Source of the DNA: Octopus sinensis | Taxonomy: Eukaryota | Assembly (NCBI RefSeq): GCF_006345805.1 | Contig: NW_021826614.1 | Span: 1 to 12,403, forward strand | Reading direction: 5' to 3' | DNA length: 12,403 nucleotides | Part shown: positions 477 to 12,403 of the stretch, piece after piece | Numbering within the stretch: position 1 is the stretch's first letter | How the letters are laid out: every line of letters starts with the position of its first letter | Position numbers and translations under genes: made by a program | Notes under the pieces: generated by a model | Database searches by the model: none | What the model was told of the DNA's origin: nothing | Seen by the model: only the letters and a program-made list of their open reading frames with translations

Positions 477-1680
477 GTGAAGGTGTGTGGCTAAGTAATT
501 AGGGTATTGAGCCCATGATCATAAGGTCATGGGTTCAATTCTCAGCGATGCATTATGTCCTTGAGCAAGTTACTTTATTTTCATATTACTCCAGTCCACT
601 CAGCTGGCAAAAATGTGTTACACCTATTTCTTTACTGCCCACAAGGGGCCAAACACAGAGAGGACAAACAAGGACAGACAAACGGATTAAGTCGATTACA
701 TCGACCCCAGTGCGTAACTGGTACTTAATTTATCGACCCCGAAAGGATGAAAGGCAAAGTCGACCTTGGCGGAACTTGAACTCAGAACGTAACGCTAGAC
801 GAAATACCTATTTCTTTACTGCCCACAAGGGGCAAACCACAGAGAGGACAAACAAGGACAGACAAACGGATTAAGTCGATTACATCGACCCCAGTGCATA
901 ACTGGTACTTAATTTATCGACCCCGAAAGGATGAAAGGCAAAGTCGACCTCGGCGGAACTTGAAGTCAGAACGTAACGACAGACGAAATGCCTATTTCTT
1001 TACTATCCACAAGGGGCCAAACACAGAGAGGACAAACAAGGACAGACAAACGGATTAAGTTGATTACATCGACCGCAGTGCATAACTGGTACTAAATTTA
1101 TCGACCCCGAAAGAATCAAAGGCAAAGTCGACCTCGGCGGAATTTGAACTCAGAACGTAACGACAGACGAAATGCCTATTTCTTTACTATCCACAAGGGG
1201 CCAAACACAGAGAGGACAAACAAGGACAGACAAACGGATTAAGTCGATTACATCGACCCCAGTGCATAACTGGTACTTAATTTATCGACCCTGAAAGGAT
1301 GAAAGGCAAAGTCAACCTCGGTGGAACTTGAACTCAGAACGTAACGCTAGACGAAATACCTATTTCTTTACTACCCACAAGGGGCCAAACACAGAGAGGA
1401 CAAACAAGGACAGACAAACAGATTAAGTCGATTACATCGACCGCAGTGCATAACTGGTACTAAATTTATCGACCCCGAAAGAATCAAAGGCAAAGTCGAC
1501 CTCGGCGGATTTGAACTCAGGACATAACAGCAGACGAAAAACGGCTACGCATTTCGGCCGGCGTGCTAACGATTCTACCAGCTCGCCACCTTATATAAAA
1601 ATGTGTTACACCTGTTGTACAAAGGGTCAGCCTTGTCACACTGAATCTCTCTGACAACTCTGTAAAGAGGTGGCGGTGAG
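477..1680 (+). mobile_element. tRNA-derived CORE-like SINE (host), split into 477-625 and ~1614-1680 by the SINE array insertion
   Basis: tRNA-like head with B box GGGTTCAATTC (~533-543), CORE-like TGTCCTTGAGCAAGTTACTT, then CCAGTCCACTCAGCTGGCAAAAATG. It continues after the insert as AAAGGGTCAGCCTTGTCACAC, colinear with the minus-strand copy at 8345-8640. Confidence 0.8.
626..1596 (-). mobile_element. SINE multimer: one tRNA-like head (~1543-1596) plus five tandem 184-bp bodies
   Basis: CCTATTTCTTTACT recurs at 623, 807, 991, 1175 and 1359 (period 184). The head (rc GGTGGCGAGCTGGTAGAATCGTTAGCACGCC) occurs once. Flanked by perfect 17-bp direct repeat AAAAATGTGTTACACCT at 609-625 and 1597-1613. 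Confidence 0.95.
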
Positions 1681-1857: not shown

Positions 1858-2934
1858 TCATCATCATCATCATCGTTTGACGGCCGTTTTCCATGCTAGT
1901 ATGGGTTGGACAGTTCGACTGAGGTCTGGGAAGCCAGGAGGCTGCACCAGGCCTCAGTCTGATCTGGCAGTGTTTCTACAGCTGGATGCCCTTCCTAACG
2001 CCTTCATCGTTTAACGTCCGTTTTCCGTGCTGGCATGGGTTGGATGGTTCGACCGGGGTCTGGGAAGCCAGGAGGCTGCACCAGGCTCCAGTCTGATCTG
2101 GCAGGTTTCTACAGCTGGATGCCCTTCCTAACGCCTTCATCGTTTAACGTCCGTTTTCCGTGCTGGCATGGTTGGATGGTTCGACCGGGGTCTGGGAAGC
2201 CAGGAGGCTGCACCCCCTCAGTCTGATCTGGCATGTTTTTCTACAGCTGGATGCCCTTCCTAACGCCTTCATCGTTTAACGTCCGTTTTCCGTGCTGGCA
2301 TGGGTTGGATGGTTCGACCGGGGTCTGGGAAGCCAGGAGGCTGCACCAGGCTCCAGTCTGATCTGGCAGTGTTTCTACAGCTGGATGCCCTTCCTAACGC
2401 CTTCATCGTTTAACGTCCGTTTTCCGTGCTGGCATGGGTTGGATGGTTCGACCGGGGTCTGGGAAGCCAGGAGGCTGCACCAGGCCTCAGTCTGATCTGG
2501 CAGTGTTTCTACAGCTGGATGCCCTTCCTAACGCCTTCATCGTTTAACGTCCGTTTTCCGTGCTGGCATGGGTTGGATGGTTCGACCGGGGTCTGGGAAG
2601 CCAGGAGGCTGCACCAGGCTCCAGTCTGATCTGGCAGTGTTTCTACAGCTGGATGCCCTTCCTAACGCCTTCATCGTTTACGTCCGTTTTCCGTGCTTGG
2701 CATGGGTTGGATGGTTCGACCGGGGTCTGGGAAGCCAGGAGGCTGCACCAGGCCAGTCTGATCTGGCAGTGTTCTACAGCTGGATGCCCTTCCTAACGCC
2801 TTCATCGTTTAACGTCCGTTTTCCGTGCTGGCATGGGTTGGATGGTTCGACCGGGGTCTGGGAAGCCAGGAGGCTGCACCAGGCTCCAGTCTGATCTGGC
2901 AGTGTTTCTACAGCTGGAAGCCCTTCCTAACGCC
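1858..2934 (-). repeat. Tandem array of eight ~134-bp RTE-LINE-tail-like units ending (minus sense) in a (TGA)5 tail
   Basis: CATCGTTT at 1871, 2005, 2138, 2270, 2404, 2538, 2672 and 2803 (periods 131-134). (TCA)5 at 1858-1872. The unit matches the monomers at 5178-5317 and 10133-10282. Confidence 0.95.
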
Positions 2935-3052: not shown

Positions 3053-3127
3053 CTTTGTTTGTCCATCTATCTACCTACTCCTTCTCTCTCTCTCTCTTTC
3101 TCTCATCTGTTTCCTCTTCTCTTGTAG

Positions 3128-3327
3128 GGTAGAGTAAAAAAGGGATCCCTTCGATGACTACCCCCATCTACTGGACAACCTACAGGCTGCAGCTGTATCT
3201 GAAGATGGTCCCATGGAGGTTTGCTGTGTCTCTCTAGAGCGTCATATCAACATTCAGTGATGGGGATGTCATCTCACATATTCATCATTCCATGGACAGG
3301 CAGCTGATGCCATGCACAACGTCACAG
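3128..3327 (+). other. Probable spliced exon, mostly 5' UTR with uORFs; candidate start codon at 3312
   Basis: Long polypyrimidine tract 3078-3123, acceptor TTGTAG| (3126-3127) and consensus donor CAG|GTGAGT (3328). Non-repetitive sequence. All three frames from the acceptor close early. Confidence 0.65.
3312..3327 (+). CDS. Candidate first coding segment MHNVT(E), phase-1 end
   Basis: GCC-ATG context; ends with one spare G that joins AG of the exon at 9755 to give GAG (Glu) in the frame encoding the TM helix; NVT N-glycosylation sequon. Confidence 0.45.
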
Positions 3328-3369
3328 GTGAGTAGATGTGGTCATGGTTGGAGTGGTATATATCATTGG

Positions 3370-3602
3370 AAGGTGGCGAGCTGGCAGAAACGTTAGCACT
3401 CGGGGCGAAATAGTTAGCGGTATTTCATCTGCCGTTACGTTCTGAGTTCAAATTCCGCCGAGGTCGACTTTGCCTTTCATCCTTTCGGGGTCGATAAATT
3501 AAGTACCAGTTACGCACTGGGGTCGATGTAATCGACTTAATCCGTTTGTCTGTCCTTGTTTGTCCTCTCTGTGTTTGGCCCCTTGTCGGTAGTAAAGAAA
3601 TA
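3370..3602 (+). mobile_element. Full monomeric tRNA-derived SINE (head plus one 184-bp-family body)
   Basis: A-box-like TGGCAGAAACG, B box GAGTTCAAATTCC, 3' end AAAGAAATA. TSD GGTATATATCATT (3355-3367) / GGTATGTATCATT (3603-3615), 12/13 match. Confidence 0.93.
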
Positions 3603-4007
3603 GGTATGTATCATTAGGTGGTGGTGGTGGTATACACACACACACACACACACATACAGACACACACACACACTTGCATTATAAATGGTCATTCCATAAA
3701 TAATACAGTTTTTTTATTAATTCTTTTATTTTTCAAAATTAAGATGTACAAAGTCCTTTTTTAATCAAAAATATACTCTCCTTCATCTTCTACAATGCCT
3801 TTCCATCTATCTGGTAGAATTGCAAGGCCCCTCTTCCAAAATCCACTTCTCCCTGGCAAAAAATACTCCTCCAGTACTGTTCTGACCTCATCTACAGAAT
3901 TCATATTTATTCCTTCCAAATGATTTTGAGAACTGCAGAATAAATGATAATCAGATGGGGCAATGTCCGACAGATATGGTTGGTCGGGTATTATTTCTCT
4001 CCTCAAA

Positions 4008-4494
4008 GACATACATCATCTCGAAAGAGTTCAGAAGCTGGCTACCCGCATGGTTCTTGGTCTCAAGCATTTGTCTTATGAAGAAAGGCTGAAGACGCTC
4101 GAACCTTTATTCTCTAGAAAAACGACGACGCCGTGGTGATCTCATTCTTACTCACAACATCATAAGCGGAAAGTGTAACCTCTCGAAAGAGCTGTTCTTC
4201 ACTCCTGCTCCAGAGCGTCAGCTGCGGGGTCACTCCGAAAAGCTCTATCTGCGACGATTTCATCTCAATCGAAGGAGAGGGGATTTCTCCGTCCGGGTTG
4301 CGAATCCGTGGAATAAGCTGCCGGACGAGATAGTGAAGATGCCGATGACCACTCGGTTCAAAGTCTCTCTTGACCAGAAATGGCCTCAACTCTTTGCATG
4401 AACACCCTCCCTGTACATAACTCCATGTCTCCCTACATGGCCTTGGTTTTTGCTTTTTAAGCCAAAAAAAAAAAAAAATTAACTTAACTTAACT
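4008..4494 (+). mobile_element. 5'-truncated CR1-clade LINE (ORF2 C-terminus, 3' UTR, tail) inserted in the mariner
   Basis: Translates DIHHLERVQKLATRMVLGLKHLSYEERLKTL/NLYSLEKRRRRGDLI...NPWNKLP...LFA* (extra G at 4101, stop 4399-4401), matching the CR1-type LERVQ..AT / L.YEERL / RR.RGDLI / WN.LP pattern. A15 (4464-4478) then (TTAAC)3. Mariner rejoins as CTCAAA|CTGCCCC. Confidence 0.9.
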
Positions 4495-5177
4495 GCCCCA
4501 GCTTTGGAATGTCATCCTCGCTGTATGTGGCCGAGCATTATCCTGATGGAAGAACACCTTTTGTCTTGAAACCAAAGATGGTCGTTTTTCTTTTAGCACT
4601 GACTTAAGCTGCTCAAGCTGTTCACAGTAGATCTCCTTTGATACCATTTGGTCTGGATTTAAAATTTCAAAGTGTACTAAGCCTTTCATATCCCACCAAA
4701 ACAGGTAACAACACCTTACATGGGTGAAGACCTTCTTTAGCCTGGGGTGCCAGTGTTTCTCCTTTACCTACCCACTGTCTTCGGCACTTGACATTTTGAT
4801 AGAGAACCCATTTCTTGTCACCAGTCACTATCCGGTCTAAAGAAGGTTCATTCGTGATATGTGACAGCAAAGAAGAGCACACGTTCACTCTCTGCATGCG
4901 ATTAGACTCAGAAAGTTTGTCAGAAATCCATTGACCCAATTTGCTGACTTTTTCAATGGCACACAGGTGTCGATGAATGGTTGAATGACCAAATCCAAGC
5001 TTCTCTTCTAGTTCCTCAATAGTAACAATGGGATTTTGCCCCATCAGGGTTTGCAGGACATTCTTGTTGAGTTCTACAGATGTTCCAGGATGAGGCACAT
5101 TTTCTAGTCTGTGGTTTCCAGCTCAGAATTTCAGAAACCACCATTGATATGGGCTTACACTTAATATCTGATCCCCT

Positions 5178-5427
5178 TCATCATCATTGTTTAACGTCTG
5201 CTTGCCATGCTGGCATAGGTTGGACGGTTTGACTGAAGACTGGCGAACCAGATGGCTGCACCAGACTCCAGTCTGATCTGGCAGAGTTTCTACAGATGGA
5301 TGCCCTTCCTAACGCCAACCACCCCAAGAGTGTAGTGGGTGCTTTTACGTGTCACCAGCATGAGGGCCAATCAGGCAGTACTGGCAACGGCCATGCTCAA
5401 ATGGTGCTTTTTATGTGCCACCTGCGC
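5178..5427 (-). mobile_element. SINE 3' portion with RTE-like tail inserted in the mariner N-terminal region
   Basis: (TCA)n then a diverged copy of the 134-bp unit, continuing into CAACCAC...GTGCTTTTACGTGTCACC...GTGCTTTTTATGTGCCACC; mariner sequence resumes at ~5428. Confidence 0.85.
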
Positions 5428-6076
5428 AATTGCATTAATATTCCTCACACTTTCTACTGTTTTGTTGTCTTTATTGAACTCATAAAGCAAAAAGATGGCA
5501 CACAGGTGTTGATGAATGGTTGAATGACTAAATCCATGCTTTTCTGCTAGTTCTTCAACAGTTACAATGGGATTTTGTTCCACCAGGGTTTGTAGGATGT
5601 CCTTGTCAAACTCTACAGATCTTCCAGGACGTGGCCTCATCTTCTAGGCTGTAGTTTCCGACTTGGAATTTCTGGAACCACCATTGGCACTGACTTACGC
5701 TTATTATCCAATCCCCATATACTGCATTAGTATTCCTTGCACTTTCCATTGCAATGTTGCCTTTATTGAACTCACAAAGCAAAATATGCTGAATATGCTC
5801 CTTTGTTACTTTCATTATAACTTTTAAAAAACCACTGTTAAAATCGAACTGCACTCTTCAAAACTTGCACTAAGAATAAGTACAAGGTAAAATTACTACT
5901 TTCTTTTCTAGCAAGCTGATGCAGGTAATTTATCCCATCCTGTTCCAACTTTTAGTTCATGCAATTGAAAAAACTGCGTTATTTATGGGATGGCCTATTA
6001 TTTCCAGCAATGGTGATTTGATTTTCTTATTTCAAAATTGTTTCTCATGAAATGGTGTCCACATCACATTGTTCAA

Positions 6077-6853
6077 GGTGGCGAGCTGGCAGAATCGTTA
6101 GCACGCCGGGCGAAATGCTTAGCGGTATTTTGTCTGCCGCTACGTTCTGAGTTCAAATTCCGCCGAGGTCGACTTTGCCTTTCATCCTTTCGGGGTCGAT
6201 TAAATAAGTACCAGTTACGCACTGGGGTTGATATAATCGACTTAATCTGCCTGTCTGTCCTTGTTTGTCCTCTCTGTGTTTAGCCCCTGTGGGTAATAAA
6301 GAAATAGGTATTTCGTCTGTCGTTACGTTCTGAGTTCAAATTCCGCCGAGGTCGACTTTGCCTTTCATCCTTTCGGGGTCGATTAAATAAGTACCAGTTA
6401 CGCACTGGGGTTGATATAATCGACTTAATCTGCCTGTCTGTCCTTGTTTGTCCTCTCTGTGTTTAGCCCCCTGTGGGTAATAAAGAATAGGTATTTCGTC
6501 TGTCGTTACGTTCTGAGTTCAAATTCCGCCGAGGTCGACTTTGCCTTCATCCTTTCGGGGTCGATTAAATAAGTACAGTTACGCACTGGGGTTGATATAA
6601 TCGACTTAATCTGCCTGTCTGTCCTGTTTGTCCTCTCTGTGTTTAGCCCCTGTGGGTAATAAAGAAATAGGTATTTTGTCTGGCCGCTACGTTCTGAGTT
6701 CAAATTCCGCCGAGGTCGACTTTGCCTTCATCCTTTCGGGGTCGATTAAATAAGTACCAGTTACGCACTGGGGGTGATATAATCGACTTAATCTGCCTGT
6801 CTGTCCTTGTTTGTCCTCTCTGTGTTTAGCCCCTTGTGGGTAGTGAAGAAATT
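6077..6853 (+). mobile_element. SINE multimer: one head plus four tandem ~183-bp bodies
   Basis: GGTATTT at 6124, 6307, 6490 and 6670; head GGTGGCGAGCTGGCAGAATCGTTAGC occurs once. TSD ATTGTTCAA at 6068-6076 and 6854-6862; the matching empty site is at ~7454-7470. Confidence 0.95.
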
Positions 6854-6973
6854 ATTGTTCAACAGTATTGATTTAATCACTACAATTAATTTTTGCAATT
6901 TTTGCATTGTTGCCTTTATTGAACTCACAAAGTAAAATATGCCGAATATGCTCCTATGTCACTTCCAGTTTAA

Positions 6974-7193
6974 CCCTTTAGTGTTTAAACCGGCTGTATC
7001 CGGCCAGAATATTCTACTCATTTCATGCTCAAACTGGCCAGAACCAGCATCTCACACTTACCCTGCAATGTCACCATAAAAATAAACAATTACATTTTTC
7101 AAATCTTGAAGTTACAAGATAATACCAGATTAATATTTTAAAATGTAAGTGAGTAAGGATTACTTTTGACATATTAATTTGAACACTAAAGGG
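6974..7193. mobile_element. 220-bp non-autonomous piggyBac-type MITE
   Basis: TTAA at 6970-6973 and 7194-7197; TIR CCCTTTAGTGTTTAAA / rc CCCTTTAGTGTTCAAA (15/16); absent from the duplicate copy at ~5820. Confidence 0.88.
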
Positions 7194-7636
7194 TTAACAC
7201 TTTAAAAAATCACTGTTAAAATCGAACTGCACTCTTCAAAACGTGCACTAAGAATAAGTACAAGGTAAAATCACTACCTTCTTTATGGCAAGCTGATGCA
7301 AGTAGTTCATCAGTTTATCCCATCCACTTCCAACTTTTAGTTCATGCAATTGAAAAAAACTGCATTATTTATGGGATGGCCTATTATTTCCAGCAATGGT
7401 GATTTGATTTTCTTATTTCAAAATTGCTTCTCGTGAAATGGTGTCCGCATCACATTGTTCAGCGGTATTGATTTAATCACTACAATTAATTTTTGCAATT
7501 ATTACATAATTGATAATGTTTTCATGTGAGTCCTAGAAACAGCTGCAGAGGAGAATGAATGAAGTTTCCGAAATAGTACTGAGATTGATTTTTTTAATTT
7601 TTCCGTTGTCCTTCCATACATATCTATTTACCTAAG

Positions 7637-8107
7637 TGTGTGTGTGTGTGTGTGTGTGTGCGTGCGTGTGTGTGCATGCGTGTATATATATATGTATATG
7701 TATGTATATATGTGTGTGTGAATGTATATATATATATGTATGTACATATATTTATATATGTATGTATATATATGTATGAAGATGTATGTATGCATATAAG
7801 TATATATATATTTATATATATATATATATATATAGAGGAGAGAGAGAGATACATACATATATATATATAATATATATATAGACATATATGTATATATGTA
7901 CATATATATATGTATATATACATATATATGTATATAAGTTTATGCATATATATGTATGTATATGTTTATATGCATGTACGGTGTGTGTGTGTGCATACAC
8001 ACACCCACAACAAACATATATATAATATATTCATCTTCTCTCTCTTCAAGAGGTACATACACACACAAATGCACAGACAAACAATCGTACACACACACAA
8101 ACATATA

Positions 8108-8149
<42 letters not shown>

Positions 8150-8208
8150 CATACATATACTACTCTATCTATATATATATATCTATATATATACATACAT
8201 ATCCTATC

Positions 8209-8287
<79 letters not shown>

Positions 8288-8308
8288 CATATCTATATAT
8301 ATATATAC
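7637..8308. repeat. Compound (GT)n/(AT)n/(CT)n/(CA)n microsatellite tract
   Basis: Direct inspection; source of the I/Y/C/V-rich spurious ORFs. Confidence 0.95.
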
Positions 8309-8344
8309 ATCAGTCAGGACTGTCTTGTAGCTAAACACTTCATT

Positions 8345-8640
8345 GGTTAAAGCAATGAGAATTCCAGCCTATTCAATTAACAGAACAGCTTGTGTATGAA
8401 ATTAGCATGCAAGTGGCTGAGCGCACCACAGACATATGTACCTTTAACGAAGTTTTCAGTTGAGATCCAGCATGACACAGAATGTGACAAAGCCAAATCT
8501 TTGAATTACCGGTACAACTCATCTTTGCCGGCTGAGTACACTGCAGCAATGTGAAATAAACAATGCCTCACTAGGAATTGAACACGTGATCTTATAATCG
8601 CGAGCTAAATACACTGGCCACCAAGCCACATGTTTTCACA
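8345..8640 (-). mobile_element. Older tRNA-derived SINE, same family as 477-1680
   Basis: rc GTGAAAACATGTGGCTTGGTGG...GTGTTCAATTCC...GTACTCAGCCGGCAAAGATGAG...TTTGTCACATTCTGTGTCATGCTG; the CORE-like segment is partly deleted. Confidence 0.75.
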
Positions 8641-8763
8641 CACATGGCGTGCTTTTAGGTCGCAACACACCTTAAACTAATTAAACACAACCACCACTAT
8701 CACCACCACCACCAACCTCTACATACCACTCTCACACACACACCTATATTAGGATATTCTGGA

Positions 8764-8937
8764 AGGTACAGGTATGGCAGTGTGGTGAGGAGCTTGCTTA
8801 CCAACCACATGGTTCCGGGTTCATTCCCACTGTGTGGCACCTTGGACAAGTGTCTTCTACTATAGCCTTGTGTTGACCAAAGCCTTGTGAGTGGATTTGG
8901 AAGATGGAAACTGAAAGAATCCTGCCGTATAAATATA

Positions 8938-8979
<42 letters not shown>

Positions 8980-9158
8980 CATATATGTGTATATATATGT
9001 ATGTATATATATGTGTATATATATGTATATATATATGTGTGTATATATATATATATGTAATATATATAGTATTATATATATGTATGTATATATATATATG
9101 TATGTATGTATATGTATGTATATATATGTGTATATATATATATATGTATGTATATATA

Positions 9159-9206
<48 letters not shown>

Positions 9207-9270
9207 TGTGTGTGTATATAATATATATATATATATATATACATATATATATACACACACCACACATATA

Positions 9271-9320
<50 letters not shown>

Positions 9321-9583
9321 GTATGTATGTATGTATGCATATATATACATATATACACATATGTCTTTGAGCTTGTGTTTGTCCCTCACTGCCACTTCAG
9401 AACTGGTGTTGGTGTGTTTACATCCCTGTAACTTAGTGGTTCGGCAAAGAGGCCAATAGAATAAGTACAAGACTAGAAAAGGGGAGATAAATACCGAAGT
9501 TGATAAATTTAACTAAATTTCCTCAAGACAGTGCCCCAGCATGGCCACAGTCTAATGACTGAAGCAAGTAAAAGATAGAAGAT
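8764..9583 (+). mobile_element. tRNA/CORE-like SINE with an internal expanded (TA/TG)n microsatellite (~8930-9362)
   Basis: Head with GGGTTCATTCCC and CORE-like GTGGCACCTTGGACAAGTGTC. After the microsatellite: TTGTGTTTGTCCC...GTAACTTAGTGGTTCGGCAAA...CCAGCATGGCCACAGTCTAATGACTGAAGCAAGTAAAAGA. Joining the halves relies on recall of the octopus family consensus. Confidence 0.75.
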
Positions 9584-9754
9584 AATCCCTTATAAATATT
9601 CCAAGCCATCGTCCTTTGTCCCTTTTTCTCAACTGACCAATAACAACCCCCACCCCCATCCTTCCCCATCCCAAACACTTCTATGTGATAATCTTTCTTA
9701 TCCACTTAATATATGTCCTTAATCTCCCTCTCTCTCTCTTTCTGTATCATACAG

Positions 9755-9887
9755 AGCCTCCACCTATACGGAGTGGACACAGCTACTCATCGCAGGAACT
9801 GGACAGTGTGGAATTAGCCCGATGGATTATCATATGGATAGCCATAACATCTCTGGTCATCATGTTGTTCACCTATCGATATTTCAG
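9755..9887 (+). CDS. Probable internal coding exon (phase 1 to phase 2) encoding a transmembrane helix; resembles TM1 of class B/secretin-like 7TM receptors
   Basis: Polypyrimidine tract 9723-9743, ACAG| acceptor and CAG|GTAAGA donor; 133 nt. Open frame PPPIRSGHSYSSQELDSVELARWIIIWIAITSLVIMLFTYRYFR with a hydrophobic stretch followed by RYFR. A second frame is also open but lacks such features. Confidence 0.7.
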
Positions 9888-9966
9888 GTAAGACTTAAGT
9901 GTCATTGTTCACCTGTCTCTATGTCGTTAAATATACATACACACCCATTCACATATATGTAAATAC

Positions 9967-10359
9967 ATCCATATCACCATGATCACTTTGACCAACCAGT
10001 CCGTTGGGCATCCATTTGACACCGCTGGTCACAGCACGCTGTCCATTATACACACACACATATTCATACACACATATTCACATATACATACACATATACA
10101 TACACACATATTCACATATATATACATACATTTTGGCATTAGGGAGGGCATCCAGCCATAGAAACATAGCCAGATCAGACTGGGCCTGGTGCAGCCTCCT
10201 GGCTTCCCAGACCCCAGTTGAACTGTCCAACCCATGCTAGCATGGAAAGCGGACGCTAAACGATGATGATGATGATGATGATCCATATCACCATGATCAC
10301 CTTGACCGACCAGTCTGTTGGGCGTCCATTTGACACCGCTGGTCACAGCATGCTGTCCA
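9967..10359. repeat. 79-bp direct repeat pair (9967-10045 and 10281-10359) of the RTE 3' end
   Basis: ATCCATATCACCATGATCAC...CTGTCCA occurs twice with 5 mismatches, all transitions. Confidence 0.93.
10133..10282 (+). mobile_element. Monomer of the RTE-tail SINE module with (GAT)7 tail
   Basis: Reverse complement of the 134-bp array unit; palindrome CCATGCTAGCATGG just before the tail. Confidence 0.9.
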
Positions 10360-10655
10360 CTCCTCTCTGGATCGCACCTTTCTCATCTACATGATCCCAA
10401 TCGTCCTCCTGAAATCGTAACTCCACCGTCGTGGAGGCCTTCCAAGTGGTCGTTTCACTCGCGTGGGTACCACCCAACAACTGCGCGGGTCCACCAATTA
10501 TCGGTCAGTCGGGCGACATGTCCAGCCCATCTAAACTTGCTGTGTGTATATTCTACGATGACATCGCTCATGCTGGACTTCTTTCTGATGATCTCGCTAC
10601 AGATGTGTTCCCTCAACGAGATTCCAAGCATTGACCTCTCCACGGATGTTTGAGC
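10281..10655 (-). mobile_element. RTE-clade LINE 3' fragment (ORF C-terminus)
   Basis: AQTSVERSMLGISLREHI...KFRWAGHVARLTDNWWTRAVVGWYPRE*KRPLGRPPRRW, the typical RTE WAGHVAR / W.P / GRP..RW motifs. Confidence 0.9.
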
Positions 10656-10726
10656 CAACACAATCACCACCAACACAATCACTATCATCATCACCACCAC
10701 CACCTCCACCACCACCACCACCACCA

Positions 10727-10796
10727 CCGGGAATTGAACTCACGGCCTTACAATCATGAGCTGAATGCCCCTAACCACTAAGCCATGTGCCTTCAC
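10727..10796 (-). mobile_element. Isolated tRNA-like SINE head (477-family) ending in a (GGT)n tract
   Basis: rc GTGAAGGCACATGGCTTAGTGGTTAGG...GAGTTCAATTCCC with A and B boxes; matches 477-545. Confidence 0.75.
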
Positions 10797-11064
10797 TACA
10801 AACCACCGCCACTAGAAACATCAGCAACACCACCTCTGCCACTGGGCCACCACTGTTTAACACTCTGCTACGTCACACACCACTGCTGCTGCGACATCTG
10901 TTGTGAAGTGACTACAGTTCACATCTCCAGATGTAAATAGCAACACTTTTTAGACAAAAGACTGATATCTTAACAAATGTCTGTAGCTTCTTCAGAAACA
11001 AGTATTGTTGAACAGTTTTGTAACACACAGCCACACTTTCTCCCTCTCCTTCTGTCTTTTCGCT

Positions 11065-11092
11065 TCACACACACACACACAACACACACACG

Positions 11093-11135
<43 letters not shown>

Positions 11136-11262
11136 ATATATATTCATATACATACATATATTTGTGAGTGGGTGTTTGTTGCCTATGTGCATATATCATA
11201 GTATATATATATGTGTGTATGTGTGTGTATTTACTAATATACACACAGATAAATAGATGGAC

Positions 11263-11297
<35 letters not shown>

Positions 11298-11367
11298 GAT
11301 AGATGGATAGATTGATAGATAGATAGAGATAGATAGATAGATAGATAGAATAGATAGATAGACAGAC

Positions 11368-11402
<35 letters not shown>

Positions 11403-11418
11403 AGATAGATAGATAGAT

Positions 11419-11469
<51 letters not shown>

Positions 11470-11863
11470 GGATGGATAGATAGATAAATAGATAGATAGA
11501 GAGACAGATAGATAAATACATATATACATACATACATGCATGCATGCAAGCACACATACATTTCTATATTCACAGATATTTGTGTGTATAATATATATAT
11601 ATATATATATATATATGCGTTTTGATGTATGTATGCATATATAAATATTCACATGTGTATGTACACATGTACACGCAAACAACAATATACAAGTATGTAT
11701 ATGTATATACACACACACACACAACACACACACATAGATATATATATAATATATGTATGTGTATATATACTATATATTAATATATATGTATTACATTGTA
11801 TATGTATATATGTATATATATATAATATATATATATATAATATTATTGTATATATGTCTATAT

Positions 11864-11913
<50 letters not shown>

Positions 11914-12093
11914 CATACATAGAGAGATAGATAGATTATATATAACCTTAATCTCTGGAACACAAAAGAACAATTCTCATCAACTCTAATGGGCATTCAA
12001 TCTGTTGTGTATTTCCTCTACATATACACACACATATATACACACGTACGTATGTACGTATATACATAATACATATACATACTACATAATATA

Positions 12094-12150
<57 letters not shown>

Positions 12151-12154
12151 ATAA

Positions 12155-12195
<41 letters not shown>

Positions 12196-12196
12196 A

Positions 12197-12239
<43 letters not shown>

Positions 12240-12310
12240 AATTATATATATATATATATGTATATATGTATATATAATATATATCTATCTATACATATGT
12301 ATACACACAT
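11065..12310. repeat. Compound microsatellite field incl. (GATA)n at ~11247-11515 and long (TA)n/(CA)n tracts
   Basis: Direct inspection; explains the YLSI and IYIY ORFs. Confidence 0.95.
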
Positions 12311-12403
12311 GTGCATAAGCATGATCATACCAGGCTTCATACAGTCCTGTACCTCTCGCCTCTCGCCTTCAGCAAGTCTCATCACCTGATCAGCTTTTGT
12401 GTG

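What the first reader, a model, noticed from the sequence alone, without database searches (positions are those of the whole stretch)
3128..9887. Unannotated-looking two-exon membrane protein gene, possibly a class B-like GPCR with a very short N-terminus
Seen: strong splice signals at 3128-3327 and 9755-9887 with compatible phases, giving MHNVTEPPPIRSGHSYSSQELDSVELARWIIIWIAITSLVIMLFTYRYFR. Established: secretin-family GPCR TM1 ends in a motif like SL.I.LF.F.YFR, commonly with a phase-2 intron at that Arg. Inference: if ATG 3312 is the start, the receptor would lack the Cys-rich hormone-binding domain, which would be atypical. The six-frame track shows only the second exon and misses the join.
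Basis: partly seen in the sequence, partly recalled or inferred. Interest (0 to 1): 0.7.

Follow-up and report, generated by a model that had tools for sequence, protein, structure and literature searches.

The report
First exons of octopus receptor phosphatase

Summary
Donors 3327|3328 and 9887|9888 are the two best donor sites in the window on either strand.

An exhaustive phmmer search found two public proteins that start with this same 50-residue sequence. One is CAI9743236.1, [quoted passage not shown] of Octopus vulgaris (736 aa). The other is XP_052833354.1 of O. bimaculoides (200 aa, truncated model). The 736-aa protein has one membrane helix followed by two tyrosine phosphatase domains (Pfam Y_phosphatase, E = 5e-105). 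It has no 7tm_2 match and no further membrane helices.

Against O. bimaculoides, exon 2 is 97% identical and its flanks 87-91%. Their N-termini align with the octopus one.

So the splice model, start codon, membrane anchor and short N-terminus are right, and the GPCR reading is wrong. The gene is annotated in O. vulgaris and O. bimaculoides; whether the window's own record annotates it was not seen. No spliced RNA read was examined.

The parts
3128..3311 (+). Non-coding (5' UTR) part of the first exon in the window. It has stops in all three frames and seven upstream ATGs. Its 5' edge at acceptor 3128 is not verified.
   Evidence: The acceptor and sequence are conserved in O. bimaculoides, but at 94.0% identity the exon part is no better conserved than the 94.5% just upstream.
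3312..3327 (+). Start codon and first 16 coding bases: M-H-N-V-T plus the first base of Glu6. N3-V4-T5 (3318-3326) is an N-glycosylation sequon. The donor GT is at 3328-3329, giving a phase-1 intron.
   Evidence: The stretch is identical to residues 1-5 of CAI9743236.1 and XP_052833354.1 and 16/16 identical in O. bimaculoides. The sequon Asn is invariant in 7 lophotrochozoan orthologues. A phase-1 intron follows the NxT in scallop too.
3328..9754 (+). Intron 1 (6427 nt, phase 1), mostly repeats. It holds a SINE copy at 3370-3608, a decayed mariner/Mos1 element on the minus strand at about 3760-5860, a SINE-tail tandem array at 6124-6852, and TA/GT microsatellites at 7636-9355.
   Evidence: The orthologous intron in O. 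bimaculoides is only about 2.4 kb.
9755..9887 (+). Exon 2 (133 nt). It encodes the last two bases of Glu6, residues 7-49, and the first two bases of Arg50. That covers the rest of the 28-residue outer tail, the single membrane helix and the YRYF(R) stop-transfer end. The donor at 9888 gives a phase-2 intron.
   Evidence: It matches residues 7-49 of P0001 and P0002 at 100%. It is 97.0% identical to O. bimaculoides, against 91.4% and 87.2% for its flanks, and all 4 differences are silent in this frame. The same intron place and phase occur in scallop and oyster.
9814..9876 (+). Coding for the single membrane helix, residues about 26-46 (LARWIIIWIAITSLVIMLFTY).
   Evidence: It is the only 19-residue Kyte-Doolittle window above 1.6 in the 736-aa product (2.27). 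W29, T37 and R50 are invariant in the orthologue alignment. Net charge is -2 before the helix and +2 after it, which fits N-terminus out and C-terminus in.
9888..12403 (+). First 2.5 kb of intron 2 (phase 2), made of repeats and microsatellites. The next coding exon (R)HKNNQMEFQNGV is not in the window.
   Evidence: tblastn of the full protein finds nothing further in the window. In O. bimaculoides the next exon lies about 12.3 kb downstream of exon 2. The strong acceptor at 12373 would give S-KSHH, not R-HKNN.

Best explanation
The window holds the 5' end of the octopus gene for a receptor-type protein tyrosine phosphatase. Public records call it 'receptor-type tyrosine-protein phosphatase epsilon-like' (O. 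vulgaris CAI9743236.1).

Shown here: exon 3128-3327 carries the start codon and five codons that include an N-glycosylation sequon. After a 6.4-kb repeat-filled phase-1 intron, exon 9755-9887 encodes the rest of a 28-residue N-terminal tail, the only membrane helix, and a basic stop-transfer end. A phase-2 intron then splits Arg50. The rest of the gene lies outside the window. It encodes a juxtamembrane segment and two tandem PTP domains.

Inferred: the protein has no signal peptide, so the helix should act as a signal-anchor that puts the short, probably glycosylated tail outside and the phosphatase domains in the cytosol. This follows from the charge distribution and from the layout of receptor PTPs.

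Inferred: these two exons are specific to the membrane-bound isoform. A downstream alternative first exon (MPALTKLPN.CCF...) gives a form without the anchor, much as vertebrate PTP-epsilon has receptor and cytosolic forms.
For: Exhaustive phmmer with the 43 residues of exon 2 found P0001 and P0002 at 100% identity over protein positions 7-49.

The product has Pfam Y_phosphatase twice (E = 5e-105) and nothing else of note. Its best solved relatives are the tandem domains of PTPRS, LAR, PTPRE, PTPRZ and PTPRA. It has one hydrophobic segment.

The window is about 90% identical to the O. bimaculoides locus L001 in unique DNA. Exon 2 is 97% identical, with 4 of 4 differences silent in this frame and 4 of 4 amino-acid-changing in the rival frame.

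Orthologues in oysters, scallop, limpet, brachiopod and annelid share the layout: a short N-glycosylated tail, no second hydrophobic segment, a helix ending (K/H)Y(F/W/I)R in the molluscs and the brachiopod (VYCR in the annelid Owenia), and tandem PTP domains. In their alignment N3, W29, T37 and R50 are invariant.

Scallop and oyster genes have the phase-1 intron in the tail (directly after an NxT sequon in scallop) and the phase-2 intron inside the Arg codon.

Anchor-less forms were found: a cephalopod transcript-derived protein P0005, oyster isoform X3 (P0010), and an ATG-led exon at about L001 57205.

The O. vulgaris annotation used Iso-Seq, RNA-seq, protein alignments and ab initio prediction (PMC10700109). 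The O. bimaculoides model comes from a separate record (an NCBI XP_ accession).
Against: No spliced read or transcript-derived protein with this N-terminus was seen. Both supporting proteins are gene models, and a last search with 149 residues found only P0001.

The O. bimaculoides model is truncated at 200 aa and is named 'uncharacterized'.

If the whole 3128-3311 stretch is in the mRNA, seven upstream ATGs precede the start, and two of them open out-of-frame ORFs that overlap it. Acceptor 3128 implies at least one further upstream exon of unknown origin.

Glycosylation and topology are inferred, not shown.

The species of the window is not identified beyond 'not O. bimaculoides'.
Confidence: 0.93

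Rival explanations
1. One reading: the two exons start a class B (secretin or adhesion-like) GPCR that lacks the hormone-binding ectodomain. Exon 2 would be the TM1 exon, ending at the conserved TM1/TM2 intron.
For: The TM1 and TM2 boundary is the one place where intron phase is conserved in family 2 GPCR genes (PMC1764030). Octopus has expanded class B groups (PMC6408891). The peptide ends ...SLVIMLFTYRYFR with a phase-2 intron.
Against: The peptide has no 7tm_2 match even at E <= 10, and no GPCR appears among solved structures. No L.C.RN-like motif occurs in any frame of the window. The public products continue HKNNQMEFQ... into two PTP domains, with one hydrophobic segment only. The same intron position and phase belong to the phosphatase orthologues in bivalves.
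Confidence: 0.01
2. The exons are real but are not translated as proposed. They could be untranslated or read-through exons, for instance a transcript from an upstream gene that runs into the phosphatase gene. The receptor isoform would then be an artefact of gene modelling.
For: Acceptor 3128 needs an upstream exon, and seven upstream ATGs precede the start. In O. vulgaris a Tctex-1 gene model on the same strand ends 175 nt before the start of the phosphatase gene's range. In the window a TAA ends at 3137, exactly 175 nt before ATG 3312. No transcript-derived protein with this N-terminus was found.
Against: Four of 4 substitutions in exon 2 are silent in this frame, and the exon is better conserved than its flanks. 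The N-terminus is homologous to those of orthologues across molluscs, a brachiopod and an annelid, with intron places conserved in the two bivalve genes examined. The 175-nt match may be chance, at about 5%, because the range may start at the other isoform's ATG.
Confidence: 0.04
3. The coding frame of exon 2 is the other open frame (ASTYTEW...SIFQ), joined to a different upstream exon.
For: That frame is also open over the whole 133 nt.
Confidence: 0.01

Closest known systems
Octopus vulgaris CAI9743236.1 / UniProt A0AA36BYV9, 'receptor-type tyrosine-protein phosphatase epsilon-like isoform X1'; and O. bimaculoides XP_052833354.1 (LOC128251064)
   Same: The first 50 residues are identical to the peptide encoded by the window. 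The O. bimaculoides locus aligns with the window around both exons.
   Different: None for the O. vulgaris protein over the part encoded here. The O. bimaculoides model stops at 200 aa by reading into an intron, and it is named uncharacterized.
Vertebrate R4 receptor PTPs (RPTP-epsilon / PTPRE and RPTP-alpha / PTPRA)
   Same: They share the layout: a very short glycosylated outer segment with no Ig or FN3 domains, one membrane helix and two tandem PTP domains. Solved PTPRE and PTPRA tandem domains align over residues 97-682 in one stretch. From my own knowledge, PTP-epsilon also has receptor and cytosolic forms from alternative 5' exons. This gene and its oyster orthologue appear to do the same.
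   Different: No hydrophobic signal peptide precedes the helix. By score it is no closer to PTPRE or PTPRA than to other subtypes. Tandem constructs score PTPRS 275, LAR 259, PTPRE 254 and PTPRA 241 bits, and D1-only constructs score PTPRK 158 against PTPRE 133 bits. The best vertebrate hits in the large search are mu- and kappa-like. D1 lacks the KNRY Tyr, the WPD Asp and the first Q-loop Gln, and D2 has Ser for the catalytic Cys. Orthology to R4 is not shown.
Protostome clade of tandem-domain PTPs that includes proteins named 'protein tyrosine phosphatase 36E' (mite) and the insect 'kappa-like' proteins
   Same: They share the hallmark D2 entry motif GDCAGGHR.ENR.KSRD...PPER.RP, a D2 P-loop of S-x-(D/N)-G..R.G, and the same D1 motif losses.
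   Different: The insect members sampled show no hydrophobic segment at all. Identity is only 33-37%. Little is published on them: 5 papers in the library mention Ptp36E, none in title or abstract.
Class B GPCR TM1 exon
   Same: Both are a roughly 130-nt exon that encodes a helix ending ..YFR, with a conserved intron straight after it (PMC1764030).
   Different: The rest differs: one helix instead of seven, no 7tm_2 match, no L.C.RN.IH motif, and PTP domains downstream.

Membership tests
Class B (secretin/adhesion) GPCR, Pfam 7tm_2 | Match to the 7tm_2 profile | tested here: not met
   The 50-aa peptide matches no family at E <= 10. The full 736-aa product matches only Y_phosphatase, plus a weak DSPc hit.
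Class B (secretin/adhesion) GPCR, Pfam 7tm_2 | Seven membrane helices | tested here: not met
   The Kyte-Doolittle scan finds one segment, residues 26-44, in 736 residues.
Class B (secretin/adhesion) GPCR, Pfam 7tm_2 | An L.C.RN.IH-type motif straight after TM1 | tested here: not met
   No such motif occurs in any frame of the window. The product continues R-HKNNQMEFQNGV.
Class B (secretin/adhesion) GPCR, Pfam 7tm_2 | Conserved intron at the TM1/TM2 boundary | tested here: inconclusive
   A phase-2 intron is present at Arg50. The same intron is conserved in the phosphatase orthologues of scallop and oyster, so it does not discriminate.
Classical receptor-type protein tyrosine phosphatase | The window's exons belong to a gene whose product has PTP catalytic domains | tested here: met
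   The first 50 residues of CAI9743236.1 are 100% identical to the window's peptide. Y_phosphatase matches twice at E = 5e-105. The PTP exons themselves lie outside the window. The link rests on gene models and on the same layout in 6 orthologues.
Classical receptor-type protein tyrosine phosphatase | A single membrane helix N-terminal to the PTP domains | tested here: met
   The helix is encoded at 9814-9876.
Classical receptor-type protein tyrosine phosphatase | HC(X5)R active-site loop in D1 | tested here: met
   The loop reads VHCRSGGARTA.
Classical receptor-type protein tyrosine phosphatase | Full catalytic set in D1: KNRY Tyr, WPD Asp, Q-loop Gln | tested here: not met
   The octopus protein has LNNQ for KNRY, WEM for WPD, and MIRT..QY for MVQT..QY. 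In the sampled protostome relatives the KNRY Tyr is absent throughout, the WPD triplet is not kept as such, and the first Q-loop Gln is absent except in the brachiopod Lingula (MVQN). Activity was not assayed.
R4 subtype (RPTP-alpha/epsilon) | Short glycosylated ectodomain without Ig, FN3, MAM or CA domains, plus tandem PTP domains | tested here: met
   The tail is 28 residues with one NxT sequon, and Pfam finds no extracellular domain. Glycosylation itself is not tested.
R4 subtype (RPTP-alpha/epsilon) | Cleavable N-terminal signal peptide | tested here: not met
   There is no hydrophobic stretch before the membrane helix, and the N-tail is polar and acidic. No dedicated signal-peptide predictor was available.
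R4 subtype (RPTP-alpha/epsilon) | Closest vertebrate relatives by sequence are PTPRA and PTPRE | tested here: inconclusive
   Tandem constructs score PTPRS 275 > LAR 259 > PTPRE 254 > PTPRZ 244 > PTPRA 241 bits. The top vertebrate hits in the large search are mu- and kappa-like. No phylogeny was made.

The most novel reading that the evidence does not exclude
The gene may belong to an old protostome clade of short-tailed or tail-less tandem PTPs that act as natural substrate traps or pseudo-phosphatases. D1 keeps the catalytic Cys and Arg, with exceptions among the relatives: Lys replaces the Arg in oysters and scallop, and Gly replaces the Cys in a chiton. D1 has lost the WPD acid and the phosphotyrosine-recognition Tyr, and all relatives sampled except the brachiopod Lingula lack the Q-loop Gln. 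D2 has Ser in place of Cys. These are the residues that are mutated in the laboratory to make trapping mutants. Members of the clade may therefore bind phosphotyrosine targets at the membrane without turning them over. Octopus would carry the form with the shortest outer tail (28 residues). A second, weaker novelty is that exon 3128-3327 may be shared with an upstream Tctex-1 gene model.
Probability: 0.25. Interest if true: 0.35.

Novelty: already known. Interest (0 to 1): 0.1.

Why it matters
It matters little for biology. The gene is already in public annotation and belongs to a well-known enzyme class.

The case is useful as a calibration point. A reader without tools predicted both exons, the start codon and even the split Arg correctly. 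It then assigned the wrong family from one helix and one intron phase. A short helix ending in YFR with a phase-2 intron is not diagnostic of class B GPCRs.

Two minor points could interest specialists. The divergent catalytic motifs of this protostome PTP clade are little studied. The O. bimaculoides RefSeq model is truncated and could be corrected.

Tried and rejected
The word-index search with the 50-aa peptide found nothing. This was a false negative, because the exhaustive search later found exact matches. The word index also missed P0002 when queried with 149 residues.

Pfam and solved-structure searches with the 50-aa peptide gave nothing useful. Rfam at gathering score gave no match in the window. 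A regular-expression scan for C.RN or RN.IH motifs in six frames gave nothing.

I considered acceptor 12373, the best in the window, as the start of exon 3. I rejected it because it would read S-KSHHLISFCV, while the product reads R-HKNNQ. In O. bimaculoides the next exon is also 12.3 kb downstream.

The look-up of encoding contigs had no record for P0002. It returned no DNA for P0004, because the gene range of about 199 kb is too long. The window therefore could not be placed on the O. vulgaris assembly.

The O. bimaculoides region upstream of the alternative exon holds an assembly gap.

The long low-complexity N-terminus of P0004 (1409 aa) maps to GC-rich repeat DNA about 1.45 kb upstream of the alternative first exon, in line with it. 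I take it for an over-extended ORF, but I did not test this.

The literature on Ptp36E is too thin to help.

Full report
THE WINDOW. The DNA is repeat-rich animal DNA of octopus type. It holds tRNA-derived SINE copies and SINE-tail tandem arrays, a 134-bp tandem array, TA, AC and AGAT microsatellites, and a decayed mariner/Mos1 transposon. Rfam finds nothing at gathering score.

CHECK OF THE OBSERVATION. The first exon has acceptor ...ttctcttgtag|GGTAGA at 3127|3128 and donor ACAG|GTGAGT at 3327|3328. The second has acceptor ...tcatacag|AGCCTC at 9754|9755 and donor TTCAG|GTAAGA at 9887|9888.

The two donors are the best and second best on either strand (9.1 and 6.9 bits). The acceptors rank 2nd and 8th on the + strand.

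Exon 1 has stops in all three frames. In the frame of ATG 3312 a TGA lies at 3258-3260, so 3312 is the first usable ATG. Joining 3312-3327 to 9755-9887 gives MHNVTEPPPIRSGHSYSSQELDSVELARWIIIWIAITSLVIMLFTYRYF plus AG. A second frame of exon 2 (ASTYTEW...SIFQ) is also open.

FIRST SEARCHES. Pfam and the solved-structure library gave nothing for the 50-residue peptide, and in particular no 7tm_2 match. The word-index protein search found no candidate. No C.RN or RN.IH motif exists in any frame of the window.

THE DECISIVE RESULT. An exhaustive phmmer search used the 43 residues encoded by 9757-9885 against 1.84 billion cluster representatives. It returned two proteins that are 100% identical over positions 7-49.

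They are CAI9743236.1 (UniProt A0AA36BYV9, 736 aa) of Octopus vulgaris, named 'receptor-type tyrosine-protein phosphatase epsilon-like isoform X1', and XP_052833354.1 (200 aa) of O. bimaculoides, named 'uncharacterized protein LOC128251064'.

The 736-aa protein matches Pfam Y_phosphatase twice (E = 5e-105) and no GPCR family. Its best solved relatives are the tandem catalytic domains of PTPRS, LAR, PTPRE, PTPRZ, PTPRA and CD45. A hydropathy scan finds a single membrane segment at residues 26-44. The earlier negative result was therefore a false negative of the word index.

COMPARISON WITH O. BIMACULOIDES. The O. bimaculoides locus L001 (CM046628.1) aligns with the window around both exons at about 90% identity in unique DNA. 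The window is therefore from another species. This divergence fits the O. vulgaris/O. sinensis lineage, which split from O. bimaculoides about 34 million years ago (PMC10700109).

Exon 2 is 129/133 identical (97.0%), against 91.4% upstream and 87.2% downstream. All four change the amino acid in the rival frame.

The 16 coding bases of exon 1, the ATG and all four splice sites are identical. The non-coding part of exon 1 is no better conserved than the DNA just upstream of it (94.0% against 94.5%). Its 5' edge therefore stays unproven.

In O. bimaculoides the next coding exon lies about 12.3 kb beyond exon 2. The window ends 2.5 kb beyond exon 2 and does not contain it. The strong acceptor at 12373 does not fit the protein.

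ORTHOLOGUES. A search with the full protein found orthologues at 45-52% identity in oysters, scallops, clams, limpets, snails and a chiton. Relatives at 33-43% appear in a brachiopod, an annelid, a bryozoan, flatworms and insects, and one mite protein is named 'protein tyrosine phosphatase 36E'.

Oyster, scallop, limpet, brachiopod and annelid proteins share the layout. They have a 30-65-residue N-terminal tail with NxT or NxS sequons, no earlier hydrophobic stretch, and tandem PTP domains. In the molluscs and the brachiopod the one helix ends (K/H)Y(F/W/I)R; in the annelid Owenia it ends VYCR. In the alignment of the N-termini, the sequon Asn (N3), W29, T37 and R50 are invariant.

I fetched the scallop (Argopecten irradians) and oyster (Saccostrea echinata) genes and read the exon ends. 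Both have a phase-1 intron in the tail. In scallop it comes directly after N-D-T, as it comes after N-V-T in octopus. Both also have a phase-2 intron inside the Arg codon after the helix (TTT AG|gtgagt ... cag|G GAC in scallop; TTC AG|gtaaga ... tag|A GAC in oyster).

The published statement that the TM1/TM2 boundary is the conserved intron in family 2 GPCRs (PMC1764030) is correct. It is simply not specific.

HOW IT MOST LIKELY WORKS. It is shown that the window encodes the start, a 28-residue polar acidic tail with one sequon, a single helix and a basic end (net charge -2 before the helix and +2 after it). I infer that the helix acts as a signal-anchor. It would place the tail outside and the two PTP domains in the cytosol, as in all receptor PTPs.

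These two exons are probably specific to the membrane-bound isoform. Three observations point to an alternative downstream first exon that gives an anchor-less form:
- A cephalopod transcript-derived protein (P0005) starts MPALSKLPLLCCF...
- The other O. vulgaris isoform (P0004) contains MPALTKLPNFCCFTSAEREE.
- The O. bimaculoides DNA has an ATG-led exon at about L001 57205 that reads MPALTKLPNLCCFTSAEREEINV.

An oyster isoform (P0010) likewise lacks the anchor. From my own knowledge, this parallels the receptor and cytosolic forms of vertebrate PTP-epsilon.

FAMILY PLACEMENT. By layout the protein resembles the R4 subtype (RPTP-alpha and RPTP-epsilon). By sequence it is not clearly R4. PTPRS and LAR tandem domains score higher than PTPRE and PTPRA, and PTPRK, PTPRT and PTPRM D1 score higher than PTPRE D1. 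The best vertebrate hits in the large search are mu- and kappa-like.

D1 keeps the Cys and Arg of the active-site loop. Octopus has LNNQ for KNRY, WEM for WPD and MIRT..QY for MVQT..QY. D2 has Ser for the catalytic Cys. Across the sampled protostome relatives the KNRY Tyr is absent and D2 carries the Ser throughout. The WPD triplet is not kept as such in any of them. The first Q-loop Gln is absent except in the brachiopod Lingula. I made no phylogeny and there is no activity data.

OPEN POINTS. No RNA read was seen. If the full 3128-3311 stretch is in the mRNA, seven upstream ATGs precede the start, and two of them are not conserved in O. bimaculoides.

In the O. vulgaris assembly a Tctex-1 gene model on the same strand ends 175 nt before the start of the phosphatase gene range. 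In the window a TAA ends at 3137, just after acceptor 3128 and exactly 175 nt before ATG 3312. That could mean the exon is shared with, or read through from, that neighbour.

The range may instead begin at the other isoform's ATG, which maps far downstream. Probes for Tctex-1 exons found nothing. This stays unresolved.

VERDICT. The splice model and the 'short N-terminus membrane protein' reading are right, and the GPCR assignment is wrong. The gene is annotated in the public O. vulgaris and O. bimaculoides records, and it is an ordinary member of a known enzyme class.

Noticed in passing
window 3128-3137, relative to ATG 3312: In O. vulgaris GCA_951406725.2 a 111-aa Tctex-1 (PF03645) gene model on the same strand ends 175 nt before the start of the phosphatase gene range. 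In the window the frame GTA GAG TAA right after acceptor 3128 stops at 3137, exactly 175 nt before ATG 3312. The exon may be shared with that model or read through from it, or the match is chance (about 5%).
   Followed up: partly
window 3154-3309: Seven upstream ATGs lie in the non-coding part of exon 1. Those at 3292 and 3307 open out-of-frame ORFs that run across the start codon into exon 2. Those at 3213 and 3266 are absent in O. bimaculoides.
   Followed up: partly
outside the window: P0002 residues about 140-380 and 440-680, and relatives: Across the sampled protostome relatives D1 lacks the KNRY Tyr and does not keep the WPD triplet, and all but the brachiopod Lingula lack the first Q-loop Gln. 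D2 has Ser for the catalytic Cys throughout. Oysters and scallop also have Lys for the P-loop Arg, and a chiton has Gly for the Cys.
   Followed up: partly
window 1870-2934; also 5184-5340 and about 10140-10280 (inverted): A GC-rich 134-bp unit is repeated 8 times in tandem (95% matches), ending about 200 bp upstream of exon 1. Single copies lie elsewhere in the window. The array produces long spurious ORFs.
   Followed up: no
window 622-1539 (minus orientation) and 6124-6852: The 3' part of the octopus SINE occurs as head-to-tail arrays with a period of 183-184 bp (5 and 4 copies, 93-96% matches), rather than as single insertions. A normal single copy sits at 3370-3608.
   Followed up: no
window 5823-6075 and 7201-7461: Two copies of a roughly 250-bp segment (95-96% identical) lie about 1.38 kb apart, with the SINE array at 6124-6852 between them. 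Both align to a single place in O. bimaculoides (L001 10635-11158). The segment was therefore duplicated in the window's lineage.
   Followed up: partly
window about 3760-5860, minus strand: A decayed mariner/Mos1 transposon lies in intron 1. It has HTH_48 (E = 7e-17) and Transposase_1 pieces, is broken by stops, and has an internal 141-bp duplication (4956-5096 and 5495-5635, 84% identical).
   Followed up: partly
window 12373-12403: The best-scoring acceptor of the window (cctctcgcctctcgccttcag|CAAGTC) sits 31 nt from the window end. It does not fit the phosphatase protein, and its use is unknown.
   Followed up: partly
L001 (O. bimaculoides) 57238-57600: The RefSeq model XP_052833354.1 ends by reading past ...LNLEVK into the intron (VSRKTSLMALF...), where the O. 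vulgaris protein (P0002) continues ALLNHRPD... into the PTP domains. It is therefore truncated and unnamed. The O. vulgaris isoform CAI9743237.1 (1409 aa) has a low-complexity N-terminus of about 518 residues. Its first 173 residues map to GC-rich repeat DNA about 1.45 kb upstream of the alternative first exon, so it is probably over-extended.
   Followed up: partly
tool behaviour: The word-index protein search missed exact matches that the exhaustive search found. It missed P0001 and P0002 for the 50-aa query, and P0002 for the 149-aa query. A negative from that tool with short or membrane-rich queries should not be trusted.
   Followed up: yes
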